64,000 bases of DNA from Perna viridis (Eukaryota): positions 5,394,001-5,458,000 of the forward strand of contig CM074522.1 in assembly GCA_037379345.1 (NCBI GenBank). The letters are read 5' to 3'. The position numbers were made by a program, and so were the translations under genes. Of the stretch, positions 823 to 61,350 are shown piece after piece; positions within the stretch are counted from its first letter, which is position 1, and each line of letters starts with the position of its first letter. A model generated the notes under the pieces. That model saw only the letters and a program-made list of their open reading frames with translations. It was not told the DNA's origin and ran no database searches.

Positions 823-1282
823 GTGAGTATGCTTGTTATTCATAGGCATTTATTTGTACATCAGTTGCTTAAAATGATGAAATGGTTACTAACATTTGTC
901 TAATATTGACTTGCTTTCCTAAGTGAATTAAAATTCACTTCATATCACGTCACAACTTAGTAATAATCATTTATTAGTGTAGGTTCTTATCTTCATTGAC
1001 CCTTTGGCATTACTTAGTCTAATTTCCCTGATTTCAGCTCCCGATGATTCTGCGAGATTTGTCTAAATGGCATCATATGCATTTCAAATGAAACAATATG
1101 CTTTAACTTCTTCAATCTATGCACTTTGTTTAATGCCAACTTTATAAATACTACTTAAATGTCGTGCAGACACCTGTTATTCCAGAAATTGTAAAATTGT
1201 CATGTTAATTTAAAAAAACAAATCGAAATCAAATAAAATATTAGTATAGTTTTCAGGTGTACAAGGCTTGCTTGATTTTCAG

Positions 1283-1564
1283 TTTCTCAGGCCGCTTTTC
1301 AGAATTGCCCGTCAAGACTTCTAAGATCAAAACATCTTGTCTCAAATAACGAACTCTGCTATCAATTTATCACCACAATGGCGAAGGACTGGACCTATGC
1401 AAATAACGACTGTACAACAAAAGGGGGTAGACTGGTCGTCGTCAGGGACAGCGACGACCACCAGTTTCTCATGAATACGCTGGGAGAACTTGGTTTCCAT
1501 GGTAATGGTTTGTGGATAGGTCTCAATGACAGAGACAAAGAGGGTTCATTCATTTGGACAACAG
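1283..1564 (+). CDS. C-type lectin gene, exon 2 (CTLD1 N-half)
   Basis: Acceptor ttttcAG at 1281-1282. Encodes NCPSRL...CYQF...W..A...C...GGRLV...LWIGLND...EGSFIWTT (WIGL motif). Donor G|GTACAG at 1565, phase 1. Confidence 0.93.
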
Positions 1565-2027
1565 GTACAGAAAAGTCATATTTCTTAATATTGTAGTATC
1601 GCATTGACATTATCTGATGCAGTTTCTTTATTCTTTTATGTTTATGAATTTCCTAAAAAAAACAATACAACACACTTCAGTGTAATGTTCTGTGTATTCT
1701 ATTGTTTGGCAAGACGAGATTTATTGAGATACACAATGATCCCTTAAAACTTTGACATATTTTTTCCCAGCAAGATGGTCCATGTAAATAGATATACCAT
1801 CAACAGTGGACAAAGTTATGTTTTTACTTTTAAAGCGATTGTTATTTCCAGCTTAAATGGTAAATTGACTTAAAGCAACGACCGGCTGAATCAAGTGAAA
1901 TTAGAAACAGGCCAAGCGAATTCGCAATGTAAAAACTATAAATTAAGAAGAGCTACAAAAATGAATTTTTATAAGACAGAAATCAAGGCAACCAAGATTC
2001 GAGGATAAAATCTTAAACATATTGCAG

Positions 2028-2198
2028 GAGAAGAAATATCATTTTCAAACTGGTACCCTGGTCAACCAGCACCTGTATTACCTGGGTTCAATGAAGACTG
2101 TGTTGCCATGATGTATTCAGATTCTGGACTATGGCACGATTACCCCTGCTCCAACGGACGCTTTGTCAATCGAAGTTATCCTTGGGTTTGTGAATACG
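2028..2198 (+). CDS. C-type lectin gene, exon 3 (CTLD1 C-half)
   Basis: Acceptor ttgcAG at 2026-2027. Encodes EEISFSNWYPGQPAPVLPGFNEDCVAMMYSDSGLWHDYPCSNGRFVNRSYPWVCEY. Donor G|GTTAGT, phase 1. Not in the ORF track. Confidence 0.93.
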
Positions 2199-2213
2199 GT
2201 TAGTATATATATT

Positions 2214-2708: not shown

Positions 2709-4055
2709 GTATTTTTCTTCTATTTTAAAATAAGTTGAAGATTTGAAAATGGAATAAACATGAGATACATGTCGATAAAACATTCCAAAAAAATAATTAA
2801 TTAAAACCATTACTCTGACAATAATATAGCTCTTACTTAATATAAACTAGATGCTAAATCTGAATTGATTATAATTACATTCTTTAATTTCGCAAGTTTA
2901 ATGTGTGCAAGTGTTACTTCAACATAATGGTACTTTAAGATTTTAGATTTTCATTTCTTTTTTTTTCGGGGTGGGGGAGGGTTAGTGTCTTTGTACTTTT
3001 TTAATAAAAGAAGGTATAAACGTGTTAAATGGACAGAATGTACATCGTTGATACACATATTTCTTATTTTCAAGGCCAAGTGAGGAAAATACCAGAACAA
3101 CATGTTACGAAAGACCCTATTTCGGTCATCGGGTAAAATTCCATTACCTTCAGGAATGAAATATCTGGTGATTATTACTGAAAGTGGAAACAAAACAACT
3201 TATAATCTAAATTCATATTACATATAAAAATAGCTGCACTAAGAAATAAAAACGATGGAAACTGACTTAAAAAAAACTTCGTGTTCTTTCTTGTTTCACA
3301 AACGATGCCGATAAGTACTGAAACAAAAATGTTATTTTAAATTGATGATTGTTTTTCTGTCTATTAATATCGTTAGATGGTATATATATTGTCTACATAT
3401 AATCCCGTTCAATTAATATTCAATAAAATGTGTTTTGAACTGCCTATCTTACAAAGTACGGATTAGTGAAAGATTGACAAAGTACTTAACACGACTTGTA
3501 AGCAATTGCAATAAAGTTCTATCTATAAAACTTCCATAATTGAATCCCGCCCTAAAGTGCACGAAATTCTACTAGCAAGATTGCATGTATGAATTTCACC
3601 TCAAATGACCCAATGGATAGGCCTTATCAGTCATTGATTCGGTCTTTGTCAACTTCTTATCTACAGTCGAACGACAATGCTACCATTGTTATTTATTTAT
3701 TTTCTGGCCGTATGTGAGTATGCAATTTTTAACTTTGTTACATTTGATATTTATTATTTTCAAATTAAAAATTATCCTAAACTGAATATGGTTACTGATA
3801 ATTCTCTTTTTTTATTTTCTAATTTCATTGGTTTGGTATTATTTCATTTTTTATTATGATTATTATTATCTTTTCCTTGTGCATTTTCAGGACAATTCCT
3901 CCCTGGGTATTTGAAAGTTGATAAAAATAATATTTGCAAAACAATATTTAAATGGCAGAAGTATAAGACAAATGTTATTTAAAAAATTAGACCAAGTTTT
4001 CACAAATTGCCTTGCTTACGAAAACAGCTAAAACATTTGTAAACCTATTATAAAA

Positions 4056-4361
4056 GAGTAATCAAGGGAACCAAGGTTATAGCGGTAATCAAAAGAATGT
4101 AATCCAGGGACAAAGCCCAGACATGGAAAACAGACATACACAACAAAGAACATAAAGTAACTAAAATCATACACCCCAAAACCACAAAAGCAAACGAGCG
4201 ACTCGGACTCCACTAAAAACTGGGAGCATGGACCAGGTGCACCGGTAGGGTTAACGTCCTCTGCTTTTCCAGAAACAACTGCCGAATTGCTCATGAAAAG
4301 TCCGGGGTAGACGAAAGAGAAAAGGAAAACTATAACACGTTAAACAAATCAGTTTTCATGG
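4056..4361 (-). mobile_element. Penelope-like (Naiad-type) retroelement 3' fragment
   Basis: Reverse complement of the 3' end of the 5250-5915 and 54340-54840 copies (MKTDLF end, structured motif, CTTGGTTCCCTTGATTACTC terminus). Confidence 0.85.
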
Positions 4362-4383
4362 AAAAAGGTCTTTTCTTTTGAAG

Positions 4384-4662
4384 CCGCCGATGACGTTAAA
4401 AATTGTCCAAGTAACCTTATAAGGGGAAATAACCTCGTAGCTTATAATGGCCGCTGTTATGAATTCATCACAACGCATAGAGACAACTGGGAGCATGCCA
4501 ACCACGATTGTGTTTCTAAGGGAGGTAACCTAGTTGCCATCAGAAGTAATGAAGAAAACCTGTTTCTAATGAATACAATGAGGTCACTAAACTTTCATGG
4601 AGGATCGGCATGGATTGGACTTAACGACAAAGCTCAAGAAGGAACATTTGTTTGGACAACAG
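4384..4662 (+). CDS. C-type lectin gene, exon 4 (CTLD2 N-half)
   Basis: Acceptor ttttcttttgaAG. Encodes ADDVKNCPSNL...GRCYEF...WEHANHDC..KGGNLV...AWIGLNDKAQEGTFVWTT. Donor G|GTGATT. Paralogous to exon 2. Confidence 0.93.
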
Positions 4663-4908
4663 GTGATTTTAATAATAAAAAAGTCATATTCCAAAGCATA
4701 AACAAATGTATGAAAGTTCTCAAAAACTTGTATATGAGAAGCTATCACAATATTCAAACTATTCATCAATCAGACGGTCAAATATGCAGACTAGGTGAAG
4801 TAAGGATAATGAATTATATGGGATATTGATTACAAACAAAATACGAATTATAAAACGACAATATGCGCTGATTGCAGATGCAAACTTACTTTGTTTTATA
4901 TCTTGCAG

Positions 4909-5082
4909 GAGATTATTTATCTTTTCAAAACTGGGCACCGGGGCAGCCATCATTACTACTGGGAGCTAATGAAGACTGTGTAGTGATGAAATACTCAGAG
5001 TCTGGTCACTGGCACGACTATCCATGTTCAACATCGATATTTAGCATAATTCCACATAATTATCCGTGGATCTGTGAATACA
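4909..5082 (+). CDS. C-type lectin gene, exon 5 (CTLD2 C-half)
   Basis: Acceptor tcttgcAG. Encodes DYLSFQNWAPGQPSLLLGANEDCVVMKYSESGHWHDYPCSTSIFSIIPHNYPWICEY. Donor A|GTAAGT. Paralogous to exon 3. Confidence 0.93.
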
Positions 5083-12732: not shown

Positions 12733-12769
12733 ATGAATTTAATATTTTGGGGACTTGTGCTTTGTTTTG
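12733..12769 (+). CDS. Putative first coding (signal-peptide) exon of the giant secreted protein
   Basis: ATG AAT TTA ATA TTT TGG GGA CTT GTG CTT TGT TTT G|GTAGGT (phase 1). Joins to the phase-1 acceptor at 21665 to give MNLIFWGLVLCFGIFKSSRG/KLDIG, a hydrophobic core plus an S-x-G cleavage site. Confidence 0.62.
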
Positions 12770-13232
12770 GTAGGTAAGTTTTATTACAATTTTTCGTTTT
12801 GATATATACAATTTTTATTTTCTTTTTTTGTTGTTGGTAAACGAAATAATGAAGTTTAACGATCTCATCTTCAGTAATAATCGCAACAGTGAAGTAAACA
12901 TAAGGAGAAACGTGATGAAGCCGTTAAATAAATAAATAGTTCTTCTCGAGCAAACAACATTATCTGCCTGTAATGAAAATGAATTAATGATAAGCAATGA
13001 ATATTGAATTATAAATGTGAAAGAATTTTTAGTCCTCAAGACTCACAATTATACATTATTTGTGTCCTGCAAAATAATTACTACGAACGAAACTCTTCGT
13101 GTTTTTATGCTAAGGCCCGTAATGGCTTTTTTTGTCCATTATGCGTCGTTGTTCTGATGGTCATTCAAGCTACACAGACACAATTATTTCACATGATTGT
13201 CAATTGAATTGAGCAAATAAACTTAGTGACAG

Positions 13233-13378
13233 AGTTCACGTCAAATTCGGGTGAATCGAGTCTTCACGTGAAATTCACATTAAATGTTTACATGAAATTT
13301 GTGTTACATGAATTTCACATGAATTTCACGTGAAGCTCGATTAACATGGATTTTACGTTAAAATATCTGCCTGTGTAC
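13233..13378. repeat. Palindromic TTCACGTGAA-rich dispersed repeat (MITE-like); relatives at ~33020-33121, 38180-38397, 51000-51190, 51395-51465
   Basis: IR TCGAGTCTTCACGTGAAATTCA (13256-13277) / TGAATTTCACGTGAAGCTCGA (13320-13340). Shared end ATATCTGCCTGT / TTTGCTTGTGTA. Confidence 0.6.
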
Positions 13379-14891
13379 AGCTACTTTTATAATTTTATAG
13401 ACTCCATAATAAAGCAAACTCAATATCTAAGGGTAAGTATTTGTATGAATCAGGCAAAATGGGAAGAAGCAGAAACCTGCTCGTGAAAACCCCGCCGAAT
13501 TGAAAATATAATTGGGATGCTTTTCAAATTTGCAAAGACCATTGTTTGATCTCTGCATGACTGGATTTGGTCGTAAAATTTTCAATAGAATGTTAGAAAA
13601 GTGAGGGTTTTTGACAGACTTATCTGCCTTTGAAATGTTCATTTTCATTACATTTTAATGAAATTGTAACTCAATGGTCCAGCATGATATGGAAAATCTT
13701 ATTTGTTTTTTCTTGATTCTGATAGTGCAAATAGTCAAATTACACTATCAAAACGATGGGTTTTTCATACCATGTTTCACCCACTGCCTGATTCTTACAG
13801 GGACTGACACTCAAAGATGTTATCAATTTCAATATTTTGAGGTTCACTCGTGTGCATACCTTCAACATATTTCTAGTCAGCAGTGGTTTTTTATATTATG
13901 TAAACTAATCTGATTAATATTATTCAAGATACATCTGAAAGTTTTTTACCTTTAAATATACATGTTCTACACGTTCAGTCTAGAAGGCATTTGCTTTTTT
14001 TAACATTCGCAATGAATTCTCATCGATTCGGACATTTCTGTTGCTAAACTTGAAAATACCTATCCAATAAATATATTCTGTTTTCGGTTTTTAATGAGTT
14101 ATTTCCCAACAACAGCATACGAACCAAACAGATCGGAAGTTCAAGATTCAAAAGTAAAAACTCAAAAATAAAATATCGAAACAGAAAACCAAATCCAGCA
14201 TCGATAAATTCTACCAGAGTAAGTCAAGGGAGCCACATCTTTGTAGCCTCATATCTAATACAAATGTTTCGAATGTTGGTGCTATGGCAAATGTCGGTAA
14301 GTAATATATGATAAATAGTTCGTTGTCAAACACATCTGTCTTCTGGTTAAGGGTATATCCTCGCGAACCTTTATGGCTGAGTTTGTCCTAATTGGAAACG
14401 GAAATTGGTCAAACATCATACTTTTGTACCAGCCACCATCAAACGAAACATTTGTTTGTAGTAAACCAGATATATATCATCAAATAATTTTGTTTGGTCT
14501 ACAAATTTAAAAGTAATTATAACTTATTATAAAAGCGTTTTCATGGTACATAAAAGGTCGGGGTTTCTTTTAAACGGTTGTTTTATGTATTTTAAGGTTT
14601 AAATTAGACTTGCGTACATCAATTAGCAATGTGTGACATATCAAATGAAAGGATGTGGTATAAAGAGTACAATATAAATAGATATAGTTATATTACAAGA
14701 ATAATAATAATTGTATTAACAAATCACTTCAAAATTTATTCAAGTTATTCACCAATATGGTGTGTTTTCTCCGTTGCATTAACACAGTTTTACCAACTGT
14801 TATTCGTATTTATTTTAATTCACCGGACAAGACATCAACGACTCAATTTTTAAAAAGCAGCGAATGCGTACCAAACCAAATACATTAGAAA

Positions 14892-15350
14892 GAGAAATCA
14901 AGGGACGCAAGATTCTTGCGGAAATTTAAACAAAATGTAATTCAGGGACAAAGACCGGACATGGGAAACAGACACACACAACAAAGAACATAACATAACC
15001 AAAATAATACGTACAAAGCAACAAAAGAAAATTAGGAACTCGGATTTCACTTGGGAGCATGGACCAGGTGGTCCGGTATATAGAAGATAATAACCAGAGC
15101 AGACTGCGAGCATGGACCAGGTGGACCGGTACATAGAACATAATAACTAGAGCAGAGTAATCATCTGCCACGTTTAAGAAATATACAACTTACTTATTAA
15201 GAGTAATCAAGGGAACCAAGGTTATAGCGGTAATCAAAAGAATGCAATACAGGGACAAAGACCAGACATGGAAAACAGACATACACAAGAAAGACCATAA
15301 AGTAACCAAAATCATACATACAAAGTAATAAAAGCAAATGAGCAACTCGG
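14892..15350 (-). mobile_element. Two tandem Naiad-type PLE 3' fragments (14892-15078 and 15201-15350) with a local ~53-bp duplication
   Basis: Both carry the GAGWAATCAAGGGA terminus. GAGCATGGACCAGGTGG.CCGGTA...AGAGCAGA is duplicated at ~15055 and ~15108. Confidence 0.8.
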
Positions 15351-17230
15351 TAAATAGTAAAAAGTTGGTCAATCAAACAGGCCTTCCTAGTGATATCTTT
15401 TTAATTATTTTATTCTGTTATATCTGATGACTAATTGTGAAAAATGACTTTTTATTGATGGAGTCGATCTTAAGCTCCTACACTAAAATAACTCGTACAC
15501 TAAGAGGTAAAATGTTAATAATTATTGAAGCTTTCGGCTTTAACATTCATTTTCACATGTGACAAAAAACTAAATAATTTTGACCACATGAATATCTATT
15601 TCTAAATTTTAAATAAAAAAAAACATTGACAGTTATGCCATGTTGTGGTTAATAAAAGATGTTAACTATCAATTTCATATTCAATTTTAAAGCCACAAAA
15701 ACATTAAGTTCTGTAGAACGGGCTTCGTAATTTGATTATTTCGTGATATTGTTTGTGACGTAAAATTGAAGTTTTACAAAACTGCTCATAACGTGCACAG
15801 AGAGAATTTGTACACAAACGTGACTTTTTTCCTATCTACAAGTAATTATTCCCTATTGTTGTTCAAATGTTTAGATATGACAGCCGTCGGTTAAAAATTT
15901 TTTATTGGTTTATTTCCGTCATGACATTTTTAATATTCTAATTATTATTATTATTATTATTATTATTGATGTGAATGATGAAAACGATGATGATTCAAGG
16001 CATTTTGCATTAGATTAGGGCGAAACAATCCGGATTCGTAATCAAGGCCAACATTGAAAACAAGGCGTAACTTAAAAATTAACCATGTTTATGGAAGTTG
16101 TCAATTAAAAAGTGTTTCCCTGTTTACGTGTTATATTCATGCAGATGTTTTTGTTTCATTCGTTTGATTTGATTTGATTTGATTTTTTTTTGGTTTGTTT
16201 GTTTGTCCTTTTTATTTGTTTGTTTGTTTTTGTCTTTGTTTTGTTTTTGTTTTGCTTTGGTTTATACATTTAATCGTTTTGTGGTCTCGCTGTAGCGTGC
16301 TAAGGTTAGATCCCTGGCCGAATGATACTAAGGACTTTAAATTTGCTGCTACACATAGCATGCGGTATGCCCTGTTCAAATTATATTGAATATATTTAAT
16401 AAGGAATTAAACTACAAACAATTAATTATACTTTACAAATTTAATAAAATAATAAACTGCAATCTGCCCTTACTTGTTGTATTACATTAATTACAAAATT
16501 ATCATCATCTTACATTGTAACATAGCTTGTGTTTTGTGAAATGTTTACTACGTGTATATACAAAATATCTTTAAACGGAGAGATAGAAGTTTTCAATGTG
16601 GTAAATTCGCATATCAAGTTCTAAAATCTATGAAAATCAGACGGTGGAAAACCATGGCCTTTAATACAACTTAACATGTATATTTCATAATTTGATAACA
16701 ATAAAACTCAATTTCCCGACTAAAGCATCAAGTACTTATTGTATGAATTAACCTGAATCTTAATATCAATGCGTTTTTTACCAAATCAGATACTGTAAAC
16801 GTGCAAAAACTTGTCCGGATAAGCGCAAGCTGTCCAAAATACAAAGTTAGTAATCATATCAATTAAGCATTAAGGTACATTATATTTGGATATTGCCACA
16901 GTTAAAGTTAAATAAGGCAGTTAAAATCGGATCGTCAAAATAATAAAATAAAACTGATACTTTGGGTGTAATAATTAGATTTTAATAAGATGTGTGTTAT
17001 GAATGCGCATGGTAGGCTGTATTGTATTATAGAAATCCATTTGTTTGGGCGAACACTTTGTTTAAAATAAATATATCATTTTATGAACATACGTTGGATC
17101 ATAATTTTCATTTTCAACTCTGCTGCGCTGCATATTATAACTGTTCAATGGATAAATCATATATTTTATAATGTGAAACATTGTTTCGTCAGAATATTTC
17201 AACTATAGATAAAATATAATATTTTGCTAA

Positions 17231-18145
17231 CAAATTCAAATTCAAATTCAAATTATTTATTGTTCAAACACATTTTTGTTAAATGGTCATGACACAATAA
17301 TAACATAATAACATAATGCACATACATTTGTATAAACAAAACATTGCTATCATTTACATGTATAATGTTGTGGACGACAGTGAACAACCAGAAAATTATA
17401 ACGTTATACTTTGAATGAAAACTTGTTAAAAATCAAACGTATGTTGTTTCCTGTTAGTGAGTTGAAGTAGTATATATTTTTTTTAATTTTAGTTATCAAA
17501 TCATTTCTATAGTTAATGTAGGCGGGACAGTGTATGAAGAAATGGGTTTCATCTTCAATTTTATTTAATTGACATGATTTGTAAATGCGTTCATTAGCTG
17601 GAATGTTTTTGTATCGTCTTCTCTCTATTGAAAGAGAGTGGGTATTAATTCGGTATTTGCAAATTATAAATCTGTCTGATTTGTATTTACATGTATCAAC
17701 GTAAGATGGTTTTTTGTTAACCTTATAGATTTAAAAACAAAACAGAAGTTTCTTATTATCTCTGAATGAGTTGATTTTGAATACTTTGATCAATGAGTTG
17801 ATTTTGAATACTTTGATCAATGAGTTGATTTTGAATACTTTGATCAATGATTTGAATACTTTGATCAATGATTCTTTGCTTTACATGTTATATATTATGT
17901 TTAAGTATCTGTTAAAATGTAATTAAAACTAAGTTCTTTTATCCAATTGTGAACTGTTGTTAGCCATTTATTATTTTGTGGAATATTTTTATATATTTCA
18001 TTTACAAGGGTGTTGTTGGAGTTGATAATGCTAAGAAATGACCTGCGCGAATGACAAAATGTGATTTTAATTTACTTTTCCTTTCTCTATAATGCTGCTG
18101 ATGTAACTGTGCTAGAATTGTATTGAATAAACAATGATATAACTG
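17231..18145 (-). mobile_element. RTE-X-like LINE 3' end (decayed ORF2 C-terminus with CCHC knuckle, AATAAA and (TTTGAA)n tail)
   Basis: Minus strand 17640-17505 reads HSLSIERRRYKNIPANERIYKSCQLNKIEDETHFFIHCPAYINYR. This matches the H.L.IE.GR...R.C..C...EDE.HF...CP.Y...R motif, with the first Cys mutated to Tyr. The tail appears as (TTCAAA)3 on + at ~17233-17251. Confidence 0.75.
17765..17872. repeat. 27-bp tandem repeat (3 full + partial copies) inside the LINE relic
   Basis: AATGAGTTGATTTTGAATACTTTGATC at 17765, 17792, 17819, then truncated copies. Confidence 0.9.
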
Positions 18146-19125
18146 TACCTGGTTTAAAAAAAAAATCTCAAATTGAAAATTTCCCAATTTTTTTTCTAAC
18201 CTCAAACTTCGATCAATCATTGATATTGAGATTTTTTTTAAATCTCAATTCAAGATTTTTTATGAAACTCATGCCCGATAAAAGGGAAAAAACTGCTAAC
18301 ATATTTGTAGATTAAAAGGTTTGCTGAGATAGTTTGTATATCATATATACATGTATATGTAACATAAGGCAATTAAAAACATAACAAATAATATATACAT
18401 TTGCACTCTGGTGTAAATATAAAACTTGCTGAGAAATGATGTATTTAAAAAATAAAGGAAATCTAATTTAAGTATAGAACATGATCGTAAAGTACTCAAA
18501 CAACTAAATAAAATGCCTATGGAATTATATGACATTTAACCTTCATTAACATCATACGTAACTATTTAAAAAAATCTTATCAGTGGCATGAGGTGTTAAT
18601 GCATAAGAATCAAAGTCTATCATTTGACTTTAACTGTTCAGTTGGAAATATTTATGACATAGCATAATACTTACAAAAATAACATGATTGCTTATTTGAG
18701 AATTCCCTGTGATAAAAAATACAAGTGACCAAAATTATAATCATTTTAGGAGGTAGACCTGGGGTAAGGGATATATCTCTTGAAATCAGTGATATGTTTG
18801 TATCACATTCAATTTCGTCAGAGCCTGTCAAGCTTTCATTTGAAATAGAATGAAATAAATCCAAGTCACTTTGATGCTTACCTGATACTGATGTAAAATG
18901 CATTACACAAACATTCCAATGATTTGTAAGAGTTATGTCCCTTACCCTAGATCTACCTCATTAATCACAAGTTCTATTATTATACTTTGATCGATATAAA
19001 AATCAGAGGAAAGACCATAAATATGATTTGATCGTGATTTAGGGCGGTGACAAATTTAACATGGTTCCTTACAAATAAAAATATATATACGGCTTCGTAT
19101 TTATTTACCTCCTCGACTATTTCTA

Positions 19126-19265
19126 GGTGTACCTTCTCTATGCTCCATTTTTAGTGAATTACAGGTTGCTCATAAGTGTGTGTGTGTGTGTGTGTGGTGT
19201 CTATATTCCTGGTCTAATCATCATTCCTTATAATTTCCGTATGAATTTTGGTTCCCTTGAATACC
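19126..19265 (+). mobile_element. Degraded Naiad-type PLE 3' fragment with (TG)n
   Basis: ATGCTCC..TTTTTAGTG..GTTGCTCAT and TTTTGGTTCCCTTGA terminus. Confidence 0.6.
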
Positions 19266-21074
19266 CTTACATGTAAACTTTAATTAATTTGAACTCCAAA
19301 TTGAGTCGAAAATGTTTAGTCAGCATTATTTTTCATCCATCATGTCATGTACATGTGATCTTACAATGCCTGGCTATTTTAAAAGGGTTCAAAGATGAAT
19401 CATCATGTTGTTAAGGCAGAATACGAATTGAGAATACAAAAATACATTACGACATAGTTTTGTTCCCTAATTTTTCGTTGTACTATCACACATATAAGAC
19501 TATAAACTCCAATCGGACTGAAGGATTTGAAATAAAACAGTTACAATCCTTCATGCCCAGTATCAAGTATTTTTGGTTTAATGTGTAAGATGATATATGT
19601 CTAAAATGTTTCAAGTTTACAACATGTATGGAACACAATATAAGTATATGATCAAGTGAAAACACGTAATAATTGTGAATGAACTTTACATTGCAGAATC
19701 AGGAACTGTTAATGCAAGATTACAATAATCTGATTATAAGAAGAACACAAATATTATGTGGAGCAGATATTCACTTAAACAAATGCAGTATTGACATGAA
19801 ATAAGTAAATTGTACTAATATAACCGAATGTGACTTAAACAACAGCATTTCGTTCTAAAAATAGTTAAATAATTATTATATCTTCACCAAGTTTATGTAT
19901 ATATTCAGTTTCATTGACACCAGTGACAAACAAAGGACAACATGAAATGAATACTAAATGACCCAAGTTAAAAACGGTTTATTTAACTTCTTCTATTTTG
20001 GTCTACTTTAGCGTCCTTTTCACTGAGATTTAAGCTAAGGGGAAGATTTAATCGTCTTTGTTCAGCATTTATTGTGTTTTCTATATTCCTTCTCTTTTTT
20101 ATTGTCCCAAACTTGGTGTATATAAAAGAGACATGAATATTTTGCATTTGATATATTTTTAGTTTCTAAAATATACTTTCAATATTCCTTAAAATCATAT
20201 ACAGTGTATTTTGTTAATAAGAAGCGCGATAAATCAATAAATTATCATGTGATTTGCAAAAGACACAATTAGCAATTTTCTTAAACTTTAGACATATCAT
20301 GTATATATTTTATATTGTAAACTATCACAGGAATGCACTTATAATATAAAGAAATAAACATGCAAATCTTTAAATGGGGTTAAAACATAAACTGGTGTGT
20401 GGAATACAAATTTGTACATTTAAGTTATAGTCTAACACAAAACCAGTTTCTAACATGCAGATGCTATTTTAAAATAAGACATACTAAAATATTATTACCT
20501 TTTATATAATGTAACGAATAAATGATGACTACAAGTTTTATATAAAAAATATTGTAATAACATTGAGTTAATAACAATTAAAAGATATTTTATATTTTTG
20601 CATTCAAGTTGCATTGCTTGTTTATTTTTAGTTGACACCATCTTGTGATACTTACGTTTTTTTCGAAAACAAGTGTGATCTTACTGAATATTAATGTTGG
20701 GATTCTTTAGATAAATATCTGATCGCACCTGTGATTATAGTTCAAGTAATACTTTCCAGGTTACACTGTCTAAATATTCTTGTTTTATTTTGAAAAAAAT
20801 ATAAACAGGAGGAATAAAATTAAATAAAATTATGTAAGATTTGTTTCCAACACATTTGTAGTGGATTTGTTTAGATGTAATGTGGCAAAATAAGTATAGA
20901 TATGGCTTGTAACAAATTTATTTATTAATCCTATTTTCAAACAGTTAAATAAAAACTGTATGTTTATTGAAACAAGTAAATGTGTTTTTTTTTTTCTTTT
21001 AATCTTTCCAATGAATTACAAAATCTACAAGGTATATGGTCAGAAATGTGACCTATATTTCTCATATAAAATGT

Positions 21075-21270
21075 CCATGCCCCGCCACACAAGTTGCAAG
21101 GTATTGTATAATACCCTCCAAAAGTGTGTCCGTCCGCTTGTCCCCCTATCTCCCGACAACGTACAAATGATAACTTAAAAACGGACCTATTAATTGTTTT
21201 GAAACTTTGCAGGTTGTTAAGTACTTAAGATACAGATAAAGTTAAATTATCAGAAAAATTCAGAATCCAT
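21075..21270 (+). mobile_element. Helentron/HINE-like fragment
   Basis: ATGCCCCGCC...GTCCGTCCG motif followed by ATAACTT...TTGAAACTTTGCAGG, typical mollusc HINE body motifs. Confidence 0.5.
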
Positions 21271-21664
21271 TCTTCGGGGGTTTAAGCATTTCGTCATCGT
21301 CCTTTTCTTTCACCATTACGTGGCAGGGTATCTCTTAATTTTCCATTAATGCGCTATTTTTGTCAAATATTGTTTAGGTGTGTTCATGGTTTGAGTTATA
21401 ATATTACGGCATGTAACTTTAAGTATGCATACATTAATCAGCATATTCAAATTATCGTATATCGTATGTATTTATTTGCGATCGATTTGCCTTTCAAATG
21501 CAGTGTATAAGTGTACAATGGTAACTGTTTATTGTTTCAGATTCAGTTTTATTTCATCTGTTATATATCATACCTACTGTGAACTTCCATTCACTTACAC
21601 ATATTAATATATATATGAAATAGTAATACAGTTTTATTATCTTTAATGTGACCTTTCTTTCCAG

Positions 21665-24600
21665 GCATATTTAAAAGTTCAAGAGGAAAATTAGATATTG
21701 GGGATTTATCGTTTCAAATTTTCCAGCCTGATACGGAGATACCAATCATCGAATCAAATGGAAGGCTCTTTGTTCCCTTTGTTGTGAAATACAGCTTCCC
21801 GTCAGATGTTTCTTCAGCAGTTTTGGAAACGAAATTACGTCGTTATGTCCAGGAAATGCTCAAGAACCGCAACCCTGATGGGTCACAGAAGACCGACTCT
21901 TCACCGGGACAAAACAAAATTTACAAAACATCGAACAGTTCGGTCCTTGTGTCATCAAAACACGCTCTCGATAACACACTTGATAACAGGAAACCGTCAG
22001 CATTTAAGTCAAAGGGTATTCCTGTGGTATTTCCTGCATCTGAAAAGAAATCTGCTAAATCTGAATTAGTAATGGGAATACCAGTAGAGTTATATGATGA
22101 GAACAAAAGCACAACAAATCTACAAAAGAAAACAAGAAAGCAAATTGCAGCATCCTTTGGCATCAAGGAAGGTGTTTTGTGGGGCAAGACAGCGAAAACT
22201 GGTGAAAAAAGCAAAGAACGCAATAAGAAAATTGATATTTATTCAAGAACAAAAGGAGGTGTTGAATTGATTGGACAAAGTTATAAAGGAACAAAGAACG
22301 TCATTCAAAATAGTAGGAACAGAAATGAAACGAAACTAACATTAGGCTCAATAATGGGATTAGACATACAATCTGATGAACGATTAAAACCAGATAATAT
22401 AAAGACAAAGAAACGAGAAGATAACTTTGTACTTTGGCAAATACCAGGATTTTACCAAACTGGCTCTGTTCCTAACCATCAGAACCATAATCCAGGCGGT
22501 TCAGGATTATCTAAAAATACCAATGAAATAAATAGGGTTAATCGGTTAAATCAAAAAGTCTGGACAAAGAAACATAGTTCACCTAAGCCTTATTCTGTCA
22601 CTAGAGGACATACCTTATGGAAACCTAAACCAACTACAATAAGTAGTAATCCTTGGAAATATCATGTACCCCAAACAAAGGACAAAATTTCGTTGCAGCA
22701 TCCAAATCGTGAAACGCAAAGTTCAGTCAGGAGAAAACCTAAAAGCCCAGACATAAAAGTCACAAATTTATTGAAACACAAAACCATTGATACAAACTCG
22801 AAAGATCCATGGCAATATTTCTCTGATACTAAAGGCGGAAATTTATGGAAACATAGTTTCATCAACACAAAATTCTCAATGTCCATACCAACTAACTCTG
22901 AAAATTCAAAAGGGACAGTCCCGTGGAAACAGAATTCGTTCATAAAAGCAACAACCCTATGGAAACCAAAACCCGTTCAAACAGAAGAAGCACCTAAGCA
23001 AAAGAATTCTGAAAGCCTTAACAACAAAGAAGCAATCCCGTTGAATCAGCATGCATTCACAAAAGAAGCAACTCTCGGGAAATCGAATACCGCGAAAACA
23101 AACGAACCGACTTTTCCTTTGAGGCCTTCAACTGATCACACAAGTGGAACATTTTCCCGATTAAAACCAAAATCAGTTATTACAAAAGGAGTTGAACCGT
23201 TAATACATTTTCCCGTCACGAAAGGAACTAATTTGTGGAAATCTGGGACTGCCAAAACAAAAATGTTTTCTTCTCAATTGAATCTAAAATCCATCAATAC
23301 AAAAGCGGCGACTTTTCAGCAGAATTCTAAAAGTGACAACTCAGCATCACGCAAACATAGTTCTTTCACTAAAGGGACAAGTTGGTGGAAGACACAAATT
23401 ACCGATAAGATTGACAATCAACCCCAAAAAACTGACGCTGGTTTAAAAAGTTCATTTCTTCCTAAAAGGAACGATTTACAAATGAAAAAGAAAATAAACG
23501 ATTCTTTTAAGCAGGAAATGGAAAGAAAAATGACGATCAACAGTTTATCGCAAAAACCACCAATACCACCTCCACCTGTAATACGGCGCACAATCACCAA
23601 ACAGAACGTACAAATGGATAAAAAAGCGCAAAGGAGAAATAAAAAGACGGATGTACACAAAATAAGGACAAGTTATGTACAGCATTCTGATACAAATATA
23701 AAAGAAGAACCACAAGTTGATATTTGGGCTCAAATATTAAATTCGTCAGAAAAATCAAGGAAAACTGAAATTGCCAATACGAAAAAGAAAGATCAATTGT
23801 CGAAAATAAAACAGAAAACACCAATTAACGAGCCTACAAACCCAACGTATGAATTTCAAAACGATCACAGAAATTCGAGAAGAAACGAGGAGGTTACTTC
23901 TAATACAAAGGCCGGAGACAGTGGCATGTTTAGAAAATCAAAGGATATTGACACAATGAGTAAAAAACAAAGATATAAACAGAATCTGAAAAATCAGAAC
24001 AGTTTACAAAAAAGTCAGGGAAACTCGGGGATGTCACGCAAAAGTTATATCAATCACAATCAGCAGATGACAACGACCAACAGCTTACTTGCCAATTTTA
24101 ATGAAGAAACAATTCCTCCCGATGAAACTCCAGCGCTATCTCCAACAAATGACAATGGGCATATTGATAAAAGTATAAATATGCAAGCTCATAGAAATGA
24201 TCGAGTGTATAATCCAAAATTGAAAAGGAGAAAGGATTTAATTGCAAAGTATAATGATTTGAAAGGAAAGATTTCAGTTCAGGAAAATAACTTAAAGGGT
24301 AGGATTAAAAACTTGCTGTATAGGAACAGTGTCTTGAGTAAAACGACAGAGAATTCAAATGATAAATTAGAAAGTACTAATCTGGATGAAAAAACAGAGT
24401 CAAATAGAAGAGTAGCTTCATTTTTAAATTCTGTTAAAGCGCCAGTTCAAAAGATTGGTACAGCTCTGTCAGTTATGAACTCAAAGAAATCAAAACAACC
24501 TACGGAGTCGGAAACTAAAACCTATCAAAGCAGACAATATAATGTGTTTGATTCTACAAGTCCATCTTATGAGAGATCTAACAAAAATATTAGAATAAAA

Positions 24601-27600
24601 GGTGTTACTCCGAGGATTATAAGTTCACATGATCAACAAGTACCTTCAAAAGAAGCAGAGACGCAAAAAGAAAGATCGATTCAAGCCTCCAAACAGACGA
24701 AAAACATCAAAGTTAGACTGTTACATCCAACACCAAGGCAACATGCCGAGGTAGCGCAAAAGAAACAGGTAAAAATAAATCAGAATTTAAGTAAACATTC
24801 AAAACCAAGGGGGATCTACATGAACCAATCGGGTGATGAAGTAATGAGACCTCGTGAAAAGATTTCAAGCGTTATGAACAAGCGAAAAAGAATTGATGTT
24901 ATAATAAATTCGAAACCATCGCCTGATTCAACTAATTCAGACGTCAAATATTCAGTGAAACCTGCAGGCAAAGCAAGATTGTCAACTTTTTCAATTACAC
25001 ATCCAACTTTACGAGCCAGGAAACAATCAAAGGTTGATGAACCATCTAAACGGGGAGGAAAAAAAGACATCTTAAATGATGACCCCCATACTTCTATGGA
25101 TAGTTTAATAAAACCTCCGGTTGATGGGAAAATTGAAACAAAGGATAATTATAAACTCAAACATGTAAACCAACCAGATAAACCTGCACAACCAATAAAC
25201 GGTGCATCATTGTTTCACAAGGTGAAAGTCAAACAACCACTTAATAATACCTTAATTCCGCCAAATAATACTCCTTCTTCCTTTTACAAGGTTATGGTTG
25301 ACGAAGCATCGAATGTCAAGCAGGACATTGCAAATAGGAAAAATATGAGCAGGTCCTCTAAAGTAAAAAATCGGCGAAAAAAACAAAGCCGAACGGTAAG
25401 ACGAAAATTAAAAGTTGGCAGTTCGGATGCTACCCATAGACACCATCAAAATAAAGGACAAATTGTTGATAACAATGAAACAAATAAAGAAGACAAACAT
25501 ACAAACTCAGATTTACCAAATACACATACACAAAAGGGCAACGCAGTGGGTTTCCAATCAGAGAATGACCATCAATCGCAACCGTCAGATCCTATCGACA
25601 ATAATACGTCAGAAGCTCAACTAAATGAACTTGAAAACTTGAAAATTCTAGAACAGACGAGATATGATGCGATGAAGAAGACAAATGAATTAAGTATTGG
25701 CAATATCAAACCAATTCCAGAGCCAAAATCATCTATCACTAGTTCATCGATCAACTATGTTTTAGATGCTATCAATTCAAGTCAAAACGATAAAAATAAT
25801 GATATTACAACGCATAGTAAACACAACAGCTTTGCTAATTCAAATCAGCAAAATAGTGCCAAGAGAAAAACGATGCGTAAACAGCATTCTAAGACGATAA
25901 TAAAACGACCATCCGATGAACCAAAAATGAAACCACCAACCATGCCACCGATAGAAATTGCAACCCTCCCACAAATTTCGAATGACACGGAATACAATGA
26001 GGCTAAATTCGAGTCCTTGGTCGACGACACAAATACAGGTATTCATATATTGTCTGCTGATAATAACAAATCATCAATTAAAAGAAGAAAACCTCATTCA
26101 AGTAAAAACATAAGGCGCCGAAAACATCGCATAACCTCTCAATCTAAAACCATATCTAGTAATATCAATAATCCTAATCAGGATAGCAACATAAAAATAC
26201 ATTCTGTCAAAGTTGAACCTACAACGCCATTGGAGATTGATCGTCATTCCAAATTCAAAAAACATTTAAGCGCGAAGTCTGTATCATCAAATAAGGTAAG
26301 TGGTACTGACCTAAGGCAAAGAGAAAATGGACAGACAACACTCAATAATATTGCTCAATCGACTTCGAATGATCAATACAAAGACAGGCAGATAACAAGC
26401 CCGGACAACACAATGGTTAAAAGCGAGGGAGTTGGACATAATAGAAGGAATCAGGATGATCATTCACGGACTGGAGCAGAAGAAGAAATGAATGTTAATA
26501 CCGACAACAATCTTATTAAGAGTATTGTAAAGGTATTAAAACAACCTTCAAAGGAAAAATTAAAAACATCCTTTATTCAATCCACTACTACCGAGAATAA
26601 CAAAGAGCAGGGTACATTTGAACGAATAAAAACAAAAAAAATCCCAAATGAAAAGAGGAAAAGGAAAGAGCTGTCTGGGATAGTAATGAGTTTGAGTCCA
26701 CGAGATCGACACAATCATATACAAACTACTTCACAACAAATTAGAACAATGATTGATCCAGACAAAATTTCAATAAAAGAGGCAATTAAGAAGGGCAAAA
26801 GGAGGAAAGGTCACCGTTCGCGTACTGAAGAAAATGACAAGCAAGTTGAAGAAATTATACCAAAAATCGAGGTGATGTCACCACCAATTAACACATCTAT
26901 TGATAGCCAACATGCGATCGCACCTGACTCGAGAGTACATCAAGACATTACCGATCATCCGCCTCCTCCTCCTATTAACCATCGAATTGAGAACAAAAAT
27001 CATGTTTCGAATCCCTCAGCCTCAAATAAAATTATTCCACATGACCTAAATAACGATATGTGGCACGACTTTTTGAAACCTAAGCATCATTCCTCAAATA
27101 AAGTAGATAACCCTAAGAAAGTGAGGTCAAATAAAAGACGTGAACTTAAGCCATTGTCGTCAAAAAATACACAAACGCCTGAGCAATTGTCGTCACATAG
27201 TATACGTAAATATTTACATGCCACTATAGCACCGAGAAAACAAACTAGCCATAGAGGACAGCAAGGACGTTTAAAATCAGGCAAACTTCTAGTACCTAAA
27301 CCCAATTATCGAAAAGAGGTAAAAACCCATGGAAGGACAATGAACAACGATGAACTCACGGAGTACCATGATTATAGTGAAAGTCATAGTTCTGATTACG
27401 ATAGAGGAAATGAAGATTATGATGAATATGATAGTCGTTATAACAACGGAAACAAAAATAATCATGAGAGTCATGAATATTATGATGGCGATGAAAGTCA
27501 TGATAATGATGATTATGACAGTAGGGAAAATCATGATTATGATAGTGGAGAAAATCATTATTATGACAGTGGAAAAAATCATGATTATGGTGGTGGGGAT

Positions 27601-28860
27601 AGTAATGATCATGATAATAGTGATAGTGATTATGATTATGATGAGGTTTCAGGTCATAAGCTGTCAAATACAGAAACACATAAGCATTACAAAGATCATG
27701 ATGATTATGAGTATTATGGTGATAGCTCTAGTGAAAATCATGATTCTTCTAACAATGCTCCAAGGGAATCAACTGTCTACATGAGACATAAGCATCGTGG
27801 GAACTATGGGGACGACTCGACAAAATACATAAAACAGTCAGCTCAATACTATTCCTCGCCTCACAACTCCGACTATTCTGCGGAATACGATCCGGGAGAA
27901 TATCCTATGAATGATGTCGACTCAAAAGAATATACTAATCCGCCTAATAAATACAGAAAACGTAATATGAAAATTTCGGATTTATATTATTACGATGAGT
28001 CGTCAGCATACGAATCAGATTATCGTCATGATTACGATTTTAAATATTCAGATAGTCAAGAACAAGACTACAACGACTATTCAAGAATATCGTACACAAC
28101 ACATATTCCATTTACGGCAATACAAAGACGCTTGAGAGCTACCGGAAAAGGGGCAAGTACACATCCAGTCGATTATTCTAGAGCGAGGCAAAAACAATTA
28201 CACAGAGAACATACAACACGGCATCGTCAATGGAAAATATCACAAAATAACAGGCAACTCTATGTTGACGCTAATGGACAAATGAGGTATGCAAACATAC
28301 AAGAAAGGTTACAATCAAGAAATTTGCCCTTGAACAGAAAAACAAAATCTCAGCCACATAGAGAAATTAATGAAGACTCAGAATATGATGATCATTACTT
28401 TGATAACAGTGATTCTGATTATTTTAGCTATGAATATGAGTACTATAGTGATGAGCAAACGCATGAAAAGAGTCATAAATCACACGGAACAAAGTCACTT
28501 TCCAATCAACGACAACGGCAATCGACAAACTTTTACGATCATGATGATGACAATTATGGTGATGAAGACGATGGTGCCGACGATGACGATGGTGATGATG
28601 ATGATGATTATACGTCCTCTGAACATAGTCATGAACACGCCGATGACTATACGGATGATTATTTCTATGTTGAACCAGTGGGAACAAGTAGTCGTGACAC
28701 TGTGACGCTCTTACGAGCACCTCGTAATAGGAAAAGTCACAATCAACGAATGAGGAGGGGTAATGTCCCTTCAAGACGGTCTCATTCGCAATTAAATGAA
28801 AAATGGCGATTGTGTGACTGTGTCCTTTGGAAGAAGGTGCGACCAAAAAAATCAGGATAA
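21665..28860 (+). CDS. Giant 7.2-kb terminal exon of a ~2410-aa, probably secreted, intrinsically disordered Lys/Ser/Asn-rich protein with Asp/Tyr/His-rich C-terminal blocks
   Basis: Uninterrupted 7.2-kb ORF in very AT-rich DNA. The frame extends 39 codons upstream of the track's GTG start to a strong acceptor ctttctttccAG at 21663-21664 (phase 1). Stop TAA at 28858-28860. AATAAA at 29402. Confidence 0.9.
27511..27606 (+). repeat. In-frame 24-bp coding repeat (DYDS[RG]ENH) x4
   Basis: GATTATGACAGTAGGGAAAATCAT / GATTATGATAGTGGAGAAAATCAT / TATTATGACAGTGGAAAAAATCAT / degenerate fourth copy. Confidence 0.85.
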
Positions 28861-29583
28861 CACAAGAGTATATTTGATCAGAAATGGCAATCATCCTAAA
28901 GTCCCATTAGTGAATAAGACATGACTGACCCAAGTTGTTGTTCTCAATAAGAGTCATATGAGGAGGATAGGGGCTGGGTTTTTATTTTTTTTTATATTCT
29001 TTATTTTGTCTTATTTTTCTTTCATTTGTGGTTGCTGAAGTAATATTGAACATCACCGGGACTGGTGTTATGTTTCATCGAGTACGAGCTTAAATTTAAT
29101 ATTAGTATTTCGGGAGAGTACATTGAGAGTGATTTGTAATCCTTAGCCTAGGGGTACAAATTGAAGACAAAAAAAAAGAGAATTTGAATGGAAATAGTTC
29201 TGATGCGAAATTCAAATGTCAAGAAAAATATTATTTCTTCAACTGATAAAACAGTTGTCTTTCACAAAGCCCTTAATAACACGAGTTTGACCGGCGGTGA
29301 CATATTTGGTCACCACTTCCTTTCGGTCACCTGCCTTATACCTTAGCGTTTTAAGTTCGAATTACTTTATTAACTCGCGAACTTCCTAATCTGGTATGAT
29401 TAATAAACGGTTTAATCAAAAATACGACAGCATTCCTACTGACCAATTTATGAAGGAATTACAAGTTATTTGAAGAATTCATTTGTGGTCTTAATAAATT
29501 CTTTTGGTTGTGTTTGAAAAATGAGTTTAATCAACGTAATGACAATGTATGTAGATGCGTAGACGTAGCTGTATATACATGTA

Positions 29584-61267: not shown

Positions 61268-61350
61268 GTAAGTACCATATTTTACATGTACATGCCACTT
61301 TCTATTTTGAAAATTTATTCTCTTAATATTTAAAAGTGAGAAAATTAGTA

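What the first reader, a model, noticed from the sequence alone, without database searches (positions are those of the whole stretch)
12733..28860. Giant (~2410 aa) secreted block-polyampholyte protein: candidate undescribed shell-matrix or adhesive component
Seen: a signal-peptide exon 8.9 kb upstream joins in frame to a single 7.2-kb exon. The product has ~65 aa of foldable-looking N-terminus and then ~1800 aa of K/S/N/T/R-rich basic disorder. This is followed by acidic block 1 (D/Y/H/S/E, ~27350-28080), an Arg-rich spacer, acidic block 2 with poly-Asp (~28370-28680) and a basic tail. No recognisable domain. Known: bivalve shell and byssal proteins are low-complexity and use Asp and phospho-Ser for Ca2+, His for metal cross-links and Tyr/DOPA for adhesion. 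Inference: a self-coacervating extracellular material protein. ORF callers would miss its signal peptide.
Basis: partly seen in the sequence, partly recalled or inferred. Interest (0 to 1): 0.78.

Follow-up and report, generated by a model that had tools for sequence, protein, structure and literature searches.

The report
Giant orphan disordered protein gene, mussel
A real, single-copy mussel gene ends in a 7.2-kb exon encoding a 2,398-residue disordered protein with no known relatives; its sequence suggests it is secreted, but the proposed signal-peptide exon is unproven and it is absent from the published shell proteome.

Summary
The 7.2-kb open frame (21664-28860, +) is real. It has 2,398 codons without a stop (chance about 1e-77), is single-copy, and is transcribed at a low level from the + strand.

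It has no Pfam domain, no relative in two word searches, and none in a full HMMER scan of 1.84 billion proteins (residues 1-1199). No fold was predicted with confidence.

A much stronger GT lies 4 nt downstream and would break the frame. No RNA read covers the junction, so the exon is unproven.

I found three tandem C-type-lectin genes upstream. All their introns are phase 1, like the giant exon's acceptor, so lectin L2 is a rival 5' partner. This is also untested.

New evidence supports ER transit. N-x-S/T sequons are halved (17 seen, 36 expected; 0 of 5,000 shuffles this low). The effect is position-specific and absent from control ORFs of the same genome. Tyrosines sit next to acidic residues more often than expected.

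The shell-matrix role is not supported: 14 heptamers of the protein are absent from the 378 published Perna viridis shell-protein sequences.

Verdict: an orphan, probably secreted polyampholyte whose 5' end and function are unresolved.

The parts
21665..28860 (+). Giant terminal coding exon: 2,398 codons counting the split first codon, with the stop at 28858-28860
   Evidence: ORF list and translation. Open-frame chance about 1e-77; other frames hold 118-312 stops. Single copy in the 723-Mb assembly. Stranded RNA reads and patchy transcript contigs lie inside 22094-26499 with no joints.
21640..21664 (+). Splice acceptor (pyrimidine tract then cag|G), phase 1; the last upstream in-frame stop is at 21649-21651
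   Evidence: Sequence read directly. The frame is open 65 codons before the first ATG at 21859.
12733..12769 (+). Unverified.
   Evidence: In frame only through the donor at 12770 (6.8 bits). The stronger donor at 12774 (10.2 bits) is out of frame. Best of 5 upstream candidates, with a chance expectation of about 0.1-0.4 per 21.6 kb at its own quality. The sequence is unique in the genome. No RNA data.
3677..5082 (+). C-type lectin gene L2: signal-peptide exon 3677-3713, CTLD exons 4384-4662 and 4909-5082, all in phase 1. A GTAAGT sits right after ...CEY at 5083. Possible alternative 5' partner of the giant exon.
   Evidence: tblastn and Pfam Lectin_C. Exon ends read directly. The donor-like hexamer is kept in the paralogue L2' while the flanks cannot be aligned. 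Phase matches the 21665 acceptor (a+gc = Ser). A poly(A)-type hexamer about 20 nt further on argues for a plain terminal exon instead.
780..2198 (+). C-type lectin gene L1: signal-peptide exon 780-822, CTLD exons 1283-1564 and 2028-2198. Ends CEYG then TAG, which lies inside GTTAGT.
   Evidence: Its signal-peptide exon shares the donor GTGAGTATGC with that of L2.
22147..23410 (+). Array of about 8 degenerate copies of a short peptide motif (consensus F-x-T-K-G-T-x-L-W-K, often followed by ...T-A-K-T), residues 162-582. It holds 12 of the protein's 17 Trp.
   Evidence: LWK occurs 5 times against 0.1 expected; instances are listed. There is no DNA tandem repeat here, so the motif is kept at the peptide level.
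27349..28080 (+). Acidic block 1 (Asp/Tyr/Ser/His-rich, net -42), with a 24/48-nt tandem repeat at 27491-27614
   Evidence: Tyr lies next to D/E 52 times against 34 expected even with 30-residue local shuffles. No N-x-S/T in residues 1896-2398 against 6.0 expected.
28081..28369 (+). Arg/Gln-rich basic spacer (net +15)
   Evidence: The AF2 single-sequence model shows only a marginal helix plus hairpin (pLDDT 60-75 locally, 50 overall).
28370..28680 (+). Acidic block 2 with a poly-Asp (GAT) run at 28537-28608 (net -32)
28681..28857 (+). Basic Arg/Lys tail carrying the protein's only two Cys (C-D-C)
29402..29498 (+). First two AATAAA hexamers after the stop (29402, 29493); likely poly(A) signals, giving a 3' UTR of about 0.55-0.65 kb
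   Evidence: pattern only; the transcript end was not observed.

Best explanation
This is a real, single-copy, lineage-restricted gene of a mussel, probably the green mussel Perna viridis. Its last exon encodes almost the whole product: a 275-kDa intrinsically disordered protein. Shown: the open frame, the phase-1 acceptor, low-level sense transcription, the charge-block layout, the absence of any detectable relative or domain, and the motif statistics. Inferred: the protein is fed into the ER by an upstream signal-peptide-bearing exon whose identity is unresolved. It has been purged of N-glycosylation sites, so it leaves the cell as a 'naked' polyelectrolyte. Its long Lys/Arg-rich body (net +159) and its two Asp/Tyr/His-rich blocks (net -74, tyrosines in a sulfation-type acidic context) can bind each other, Ca2+ or metal ions, and anionic partners. 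That would make a multivalent, charge-driven extracellular scaffold or coacervate in a soft secretion (foot/byssal gland, mucus or another tissue-specific secretion) rather than a component of the mineral shell.
For: Real coding exon. In-frame 12-nt indel polymorphism in a transcript contig. Single copy. Sense-strand RNA: 17 of 17 stranded reads in run X10; contigs in some runs of the species and none in others. An upstream exon is required (frame open 65 codons before the first Met, good acceptor). ER transit: N-x-[ST] occurs 17 times against 36.1+-5.2 expected, with 0 of 5,000 shuffles this low. The depletion is robust to 30- and 100-residue local shuffles. Among N, D, Q, K and H at offsets -3 to +4, only the pair N with S/T at +2 is depleted. 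The neighbouring PH-domain ORF shows no depletion, nor do 26 other open stretches from 297 kb of the same genome (43 against 38.1). Tyr is adjacent to D/E 52 times against 34. CDK-type [ST]P.[KR] sites occur 0 times against 4.2, and CK2-type sites are not enriched. The neighbourhood holds secreted genes with the same phase-1 design. Orphan status. Not a shell protein.
Against: No signal peptide has been shown, and no read covers the 5' junction. Expression in the only raw RNA runs laid is very low (17 reads) or nil, unlike typical structural secretions; the tissues are unknown. K/R clusters (4 of 5 residues) are enriched (26 against 9-12) and would also suit nuclear import. The composition is non-repetitive and close to what AT-rich codons give, which is typical of fast-evolving intracellular disorder. 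Sequon avoidance is an indirect, non-standard argument. Coacervation and ion binding are pure inference.
Confidence: 0.5

Rival explanations
1. One reading: the 37-nt exon at 12733-12769 supplies Met plus a 12-residue hydrophobic core and splices over 8.9 kb to 21665. This gives a 2,410-residue secreted shell-matrix or adhesive protein.
For: It is in frame and in phase 1, the same design and even the same length (37 nt) as the real signal-peptide exon of lectin L2. It is the best of the upstream candidates; none as good on both scores was found in 99 kb x 3 phases elsewhere. The sequence is unique, with a TATA-like box about 60 nt upstream. Secretion as such is supported.
Against: The needed donor (6.8 bits) sits 4 nt upstream of a near-perfect donor (10.2 bits) that would give a stop after three codons of the giant exon. 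Two out-of-frame ATGs lie within 30 nt upstream. T-rich DNA makes such mini-ORFs common, about 2.8 per 21.6 kb at a loose cut. There is no RNA support. The protein is absent from the shell proteome.
Confidence: 0.15
2. Lectin fusion: the giant exon is the last exon of the upstream C-type lectin gene L2, or of a longer transcript through the lectin array. The product would be signal peptide + CTLD + a 2,398-residue disordered tail, a lectican- or apfp-1-like bridging protein.
For: All lectin introns are phase 1. Exon b of L2 ends ...CEY + 1 nt followed by GTAAGT. The same hexamer is kept in paralogue L2' and as GTTAGT in L1, although the flanks cannot be aligned. The 21665 acceptor is phase 1 and on the same strand, and no other gene is recognised in between. 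L2 and L2' share no further downstream exon. A CTLD plus low-complexity byssal protein exists in Atrina (PMC4912638). Tandem foot-specific lectins followed by unannotated foot-specific genes are reported in P. viridis (PMC7971044); this is a lead only, not mapped to this locus.
Against: Phase match alone has a 1-in-3 chance. L1 reads CEYG-stop and a distant paralogue ends ICEKPLG-stop, the usual way CTLD genes end. L2 and L2' each have a poly(A)-type hexamer about 20 nt after CEY. The intron would be 16.6 kb. No RNA evidence. The joined model was not searched.
Confidence: 0.2
3. An intracellular, probably nuclear or nucleolar, disordered protein. Upstream exons would lack a signal peptide, the K/R clusters would act as nuclear import signals, and the acidic blocks as histone- or cation-binding tracts.
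For: Six strong K/R clusters, with 4-of-5 K/R windows at 26 against 9-12 expected. K/S/N/R-rich, non-repetitive, rapidly evolving sequence with low expression. No signal peptide demonstrated.
Against: The position-specific sequon depletion has no known reason outside the ER. The strict NLS pattern K-[KR]-x-[KR] is not enriched (11 against 8-9). CDK and CK2 site patterns are depleted rather than enriched. The acidic blocks are Tyr/His-rich, not the Ser/Glu type of nucleolar proteins. No nuclear-family domain.
Confidence: 0.22
4. A transcribed but functionless or decaying open frame, with no selected protein product.
For: No relatives anywhere; composition close to AT-driven codon usage; very low RNA level.
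Against: A 7.2-kb frame cannot stay open without selection (about 1e-77). There is an in-frame indel polymorphism, a peptide-level motif array, and directional motif statistics.
Confidence: 0.03

Closest known systems
Acidic bivalve shell-matrix proteins (Aspein, Asprich, MSP-1, Pif80 type)
   Same: Asp-rich, low-complexity, Cys-poor stretches with a poly-Asp run; lineage-restricted; expected to be secreted.
   Different: Asp is 7 % overall and reaches 18-26 % only in 346 of 2,398 residues. About 76 % of the protein is strongly basic and non-repetitive. No sequence similarity. Not among the 378 published P. viridis shell proteins.
Mussel foot / byssal proteins and other coacervating marine adhesives (mfp/Pvfp; sandcastle-worm cement as an oppositely charged pair)
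   Same: Cationic Lys-rich disorder, Tyr and His present, and oppositely charged blocks that could drive complex coacervation. The gene design of a short phase-1 signal exon plus one large exon would fit if the exon is real.
   Different: No tandem peptide repeats. Tyr lies in an acidic, not a Lys/Gly, context (YK|KY 15 against 13 expected). At 275 kDa it is far larger. No evidence of foot-specific high expression.
CTLD-plus-low-complexity matrix proteins: Atrina pectinata foot protein-1 (PMC4912638) and vertebrate lecticans
   Same: If the lectin-fusion model holds: a signal peptide, a C-type lectin domain and a long disordered region encoded by a giant exon in one secreted protein.
   Different: The link is untested here. 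The CTLD would be N-terminal, whereas it is C-terminal in apfp-1 and lecticans. The lectins carry QPS/QPA and WHD in place of the canonical EPN/QPD and WND sugar-binding motifs (read; recalled consensus, not tested).
Nucleolar acidic/basic disordered proteins (Nopp140/NOLC1, nucleolin, Ki-67 giant exon)
   Same: Very long disordered chain from one giant exon, with basic clusters and acidic tracts.
   Different: No family domain. Acidic tracts are Asp/Tyr/His, not Ser/Glu. CK2 and CDK motifs are not enriched. Sequon avoidance points to the ER.

Membership tests
Acidic bivalve shell-matrix proteins | N-terminal cleavable signal peptide | tested here: inconclusive
   The candidate exon is frame-compatible but rests on a weak donor and has no RNA support.
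Acidic bivalve shell-matrix proteins | Physically present in shell extracts | tested here: not met
   14 heptamers spread over the protein are absent from the full sequences of the 378 P. viridis shell proteins (PMC6641155 S1-S4). This assumes the genome is P. viridis and that the mantle unigene set covered the transcript.
Acidic bivalve shell-matrix proteins | Mature chain dominated by Asp/Ser/Gly acidic repeats | tested here: not met
   Overall pI is 9.7 and Asp is 7.1 %. The acidic blocks cover 346 residues only.
Mussel foot (byssal adhesive) proteins | Tandem peptide repeats rich in Tyr/DOPA with Lys, Gly, Pro | tested here: not met
   TRF finds only a 24/48-nt repeat and a GAT run in the acidic blocks. 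Tyr is 3.5 % and Tyr-Lys adjacency is not enriched.
Mussel foot (byssal adhesive) proteins | Foot-gland-specific, high expression | tested here: inconclusive
   17 reads in one RNA run and 0 in another. Contigs appear in some runs of the species only. Tissues are coded and not known.
CTLD-containing matrix proteins (lecticans, apfp-1) | C-type lectin domain and disordered region on one polypeptide | tested here: inconclusive
   The lectin L2 exon end and the giant-exon acceptor are both phase 1 and on the same strand. A stop and poly(A)-type hexamers right after the CTLD fit a separate gene equally well. No RNA.
Nucleolar acidic/basic IDPs (Nopp140, nucleolin, Ki-67) | Family domains (SRP40_C/LisH, RRM, FHA/PP1-binding) or sequence homology | tested here: not met
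   No Pfam hit at E<=1 over the whole exon. No homologue found.
Nucleolar acidic/basic IDPs (Nopp140, nucleolin, Ki-67) | Ser/acidic CK2-type clusters and CDK sites | tested here: not met
   [ST]xx[DE] occurs 38 times against 52 expected; [ST]P.[KR] 0 times against 4.2.
SIBLING/SCPP-type acidic secreted phosphoproteins | S-x-E/D (FAM20C) motif enrichment, RGD | tested here: not met
   S.[DE] occurs 37 times against 33-34 expected; no RGD or KGD.

The most novel reading that the evidence does not exclude
A giant secreted polyelectrolyte stripped of N-glycosylation sites, possibly tethered to a C-type lectin head. It would act as a self-complementary (basic body, sulfated-Tyr/Asp/His acidic blocks) coacervating linker in a mussel secretion. 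That would be a kind of extracellular material protein with no described relative.
Probability: 0.25. Interest if true: 0.65.

Novelty: new member of a known kind. Interest (0 to 1): 0.42.

Why it matters
Bivalve genomes hold many lineage-specific low-complexity genes that annotation pipelines miss or truncate, and some of them build byssus, mucus or shell. This one is unusually large (275 kDa) and has no relative among billions of proteins. It also carries an internal statistical signature, position-specific loss of N-x-S/T, that suggests ER transit without the signal peptide being seen. If that signature holds up, it offers a cheap way to sort orphan disordered proteins into secreted and intracellular when the 5' exon is unknown. 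The protein itself would be a candidate natural block polyelectrolyte. If it does not hold up, this is one more fast-evolving disordered orphan.

Tried and rejected
- Homology: Pfam on the whole exon gave nothing. Word searches with the full exon and with the first 150 residues gave nothing. A full HMMER scan of 1.84 billion representatives with residues 1-1199 gave nothing. Two ESM Atlas queries gave nothing. Residues 1200-2398 were screened only by Pfam, and partly by the Atlas.
- Structure: single-sequence AF2 of the N-terminal 110 residues and the C-terminal 269 residues gave pLDDT 44.6 and 50.0. That is too low for a fold search, so none was run.
It showed sense reads inside the exon but nothing within 430 nt of the acceptor, no joints and no useful loose ends. 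Neither junction could be tested.
- Paralogues and retrocopies that might reveal the spliced 5' end: none; the gene is single copy.
- A shared downstream exon among the three lectins: tblastx and blastn found only transposon matches.
- Lectin orthologues that might show the natural C-terminus: only fish ladderlectins at about 40 % identity.
- Other direct signal-exon candidates were rejected. The one at 16322 lies beside a TTTG microsatellite. The one at 20960 gets its hydrophobic core from a poly-T run and has a poor donor.
- An unspliced model starting at Met66 was rejected: the frame is open 65 codons upstream (chance about 0.004) and a strong acceptor is present.
- A recalled resemblance of the W-K motif to the Pvfp-1 decapeptide was not tested and is not relied on.
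- Mapping to gene models pvir_s00466g47-g50 failed because that paper's supplements hold no sequences.
- Peptide strings were not found in any paper text.
- A repeat map of the 16.6-kb interval returned only the most abundant transposon family.


Full report
**What is there**

The window is AT-rich (about 33 % GC) with no N. The + strand holds one open frame from 21652 to the stop at 28858-28860. The ORF listing reports 2,358 codons from an internal GTG. Counting from the splice acceptor at 21664/21665, the frame has 2,398 codons.

With the local base composition a stop is expected about every 14 codons, so the chance of such a frame is about 1e-77. The five other frames of the same DNA carry 118-312 stops.

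The three pieces I searched in the 723-Mb assembly each matched only this locus, so there are no paralogues or retrocopies.

The protein has these features:
- Mass 275 kDa, pI 9.7, GRAVY -1.31, and only two Cys.
- No hydrophobic run longer than five residues, so no internal membrane anchor.

| Segment | Coordinates or residues | Character | Net charge |
|---|---|---|---|
| Head | about 70 residues | mixed composition | |
| Basic body | residues 71-1895 | K/S/N/T-rich | +159 |
| Acidic block 1 | 27349-28080 | Asp/Tyr/Ser/His-rich | -42 |
| Spacer | 28081-28369 | Arg-rich | +15 |
| Acidic block 2 | 28370-28680 | Asp-rich, with a GAT run | -32 |
| Tail | 28681-28857 | basic | +14 |

Tandem repeats at the DNA level occur only in the acidic blocks.

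**Is it a gene?**

- The frame stays open for 65 codons before the first Met (chance about 0.004). The last upstream stop is followed within 12 nt by a pyrimidine tract and cag|G. This is an internal or terminal exon entered in phase 1, not a free-standing ORF.
- In the one read-laying run allowed, a stranded RNA-seq run of the same species gave 17 reads, all in the orientation expected for a + strand transcript. A second run gave none.
- Two contig sets that are probably transcriptomes covered the exon in patches (22094-26499) but not the 1.1 kb upstream. One of them carried an in-frame 12-nt deletion allele. No joint was seen inside the part laid.
- Across the runs listed for the species, some hold 12-22 % of the exon's words and many hold none. 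That fits a tissue- or stage-restricted, weakly expressed RNA.
- The five point differences seen (two synonymous, three not) are too few to measure selection.

**Relatives and folds**

All of the following came back empty:
- Pfam at E<=1.
- The word-index search with the whole exon and with its first 150 residues.
- The exhaustive HMMER scan of 1.84 billion representatives with residues 1-1199.
- Two ESM Atlas queries.

The same databases do hold animal proteins. Earlier notes of this scan report oyster relatives for other genes of this genome. So the blank is meaningful: this is an orphan, or it has diverged beyond recognition.

AF2 without an alignment gave pLDDT 44.6 for the head and 50.0 for the last 269 residues, so I ran no fold search.

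Residues 162-582 contain about eight degenerate copies of a short motif (F-x-T-K-G-T-x-L-W-K, often followed by T-A-K-T). They hold 12 of the 17 Trp. LWK occurs five times against 0.1 expected, and there is no DNA repeat underneath, so the motif is kept at the peptide level. Its partner is unknown.

**The proposed signal-peptide exon**

The arithmetic is right: ATG at 12733, 37 nt, phase 1, and G|GC makes Gly. Three points weaken it.
1. The donor it needs (ttg|GTAGGT, 6.8 bits on a generic donor matrix) lies 4 nt upstream of tag|GTAAGT (10.2 bits). Joined to the same acceptor, that stronger donor gives a stop after three codons.
2. Two out-of-frame ATGs lie within 30 nt upstream.
3. T-rich DNA produces such mini-ORFs readily. 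At a loose cut I count five candidates in the 21.6 kb upstream, against about 2.8 expected from the rest of the window. At the candidate's own quality the expectation is roughly 0.1-0.4.

In its favour, it is the best candidate and it lies in unique sequence. It also has the same design as two genuine signal exons nearby, described next. No RNA covers it. I rate it about 0.15.

**An unnoticed neighbour: three tandem C-type lectin genes**

Two of the other candidates from my scan turned out to be real signal-peptide exons of C-type lectin genes on the same strand.
- L1: exons 780-822, 1283-1564 and 2028-2198.
- L2: exons 3677-3713, 4384-4662 and 4909-5082.
- L2': a third copy 7-11 kb upstream of the window.

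These assignments rest. The two signal exons share the donor GTGAGTATGC. Every intron is phase 1. L2 and L2' differ by 24 synonymous and 4 non-synonymous codon changes, yet their intron flanks cannot be aligned.

Each CTLD ends ...P-W-[IV]-C-E-Y plus one base, followed by GT[AT]AGT. Between L2 and L2', similarity stops right after that hexamer. If it is a live donor, it is in phase 1, and so is the giant exon's acceptor (a + gc = Ser). L2 and L2' share no further exon downstream.

So a fusion of signal peptide, CTLD and a 2,398-residue tail is frame-compatible. It has a precedent in Atrina foot protein-1.

Against the fusion:
- L1 reads CEYG-stop, and a distant paralogue ends ICEKPLG-stop, the usual way such genes end.
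- L2 and L2' each have a poly(A)-type hexamer about 20 nt after CEY.
- A phase match alone has a one-in-three chance.

I rate the fusion about 0.2.

**Evidence from the exon itself that the protein enters the ER**

- The acceptor motif for N-glycosylation, N-x-S/T (x not Pro), occurs 17 times where 36.1 +- 5.2 are expected from the composition. None of 5,000 shuffles was this low.
- The deficit persists when residues are shuffled only within 30- or 100-residue windows.
- It appears in all four quarters of the protein, and the motif is absent from the acidic C-terminal 503 residues (0 against 6.0).
- It is position-specific. Of 35 combinations of N, D, Q, K or H with S/T at offsets -3 to +4, only N with S/T at +2 is depleted (19 against 38, counting N-P-S/T). 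The reverse pattern and the Q and D analogues sit at expectation.
- Controls show no depletion: the neighbouring PH-domain ORF has 4 against 5.4, and 26 other open stretches of 150 residues or more from 297 kb of the same genome have 43 against 38.1.

I know of no reason for such avoidance other than exposure to oligosaccharyltransferase. This step is my inference, not an established test.

Two further points agree with it. Tyr sits next to Asp/Glu 52 times against 34 even under local shuffling, which is the context of tyrosine sulfation, a Golgi modification (established knowledge; not tested). CDK-type and CK2-type phosphorylation patterns are depleted rather than enriched.

Pointing the other way, windows with four K/R in five residues are enriched (26 against 9-12). 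The stricter K-[KR]-x-[KR] pattern is not enriched (11 against 8-9).

Overall I put secretion at about 0.75.

**Shell, byssus or something else?**

Earlier agents of this scan reached the same species.

The published P. viridis shell proteome gives the full sequences of its 378 proteins (PMC6641155). Fourteen heptamers spread along this protein, and the lectin motifs, are absent from them. The shell-matrix reading therefore has no support.

The protein also lacks the tandem repeats and the Tyr-Lys chemistry of foot proteins. The foot-transcriptome paper lists tandem foot-specific lectins followed by unannotated foot-specific genes, but its supplements carry no sequences, so I could not map them to this locus. 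This is a lead only.

**How it most likely works**

Shown: the charge blocks, the motif statistics, and the transcription.

Inferred: after ER entry and without N-glycans, the long cationic body and the Asp/Tyr/His blocks can pair with each other, with Ca2+ or metal ions, and with anionic polymers. That would give a multivalent extracellular scaffold or coacervate in a tissue-restricted soft secretion. The W-K motif array may be a docking site for an unknown partner.

**Verdict**

'Secreted' gains new indirect support. 'Shell matrix' is not supported. Function remains open.

Noticed in passing
window 780-5082 (+) and L004/L006 (window coordinates -10731 to -7368): Three tandem C-type lectin genes (L2', L1, L2), each with a 37-43-nt phase-1 signal exon and two phase-1 CTLD exons. 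L2 and L2' exons are about 93-96 % identical (24 synonymous and 4 non-synonymous codon changes), yet their intron flanks cannot be aligned right up to the splice sites.
   Followed up: partly
window 35972-36745: A 33-nt minisatellite of 23.6 copies (78 % match) that is open in two + frames, giving P-V-Y-P-G-I-G-L-H-M-L-type peptide repeats. It could be plain satellite DNA or a repetitive exon.
   Followed up: no
window 5256-5915, 10854-11203, 7206-7370, 14888-15350: Copies and fragments of a very abundant element of about 670 nt. The first-look search returned more than 50,000 candidates across the genome, and the copies scored were 83-88 % identical. These copies fill much of the interval between the lectins and the giant exon.
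   Followed up: partly
window 29584-29789: A 59-nt tandem repeat of 3.5 copies at 99 % identity, about 0.7 kb after the giant exon's stop. It lies just beyond the first two AATAAA hexamers.
   Followed up: no
window 59312-61333 (+): A 673-codon open frame with two PH-domain matches (Pfam PF00169, E 8e-18), a separate and probably intracellular gene. Used here only as a control for the sequon statistic.
   Followed up: partly
window 23851 and 24007: One transcript contig carries an in-frame 12-nt deletion allele at 23851. It also has a 1-nt insertion at 24007 inside an A6 run, which is probably a homopolymer error.
   Followed up: partly
The real signal exon of lectin L1 has a similar ATTTATAT about 45 nt upstream.
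   Followed up: no
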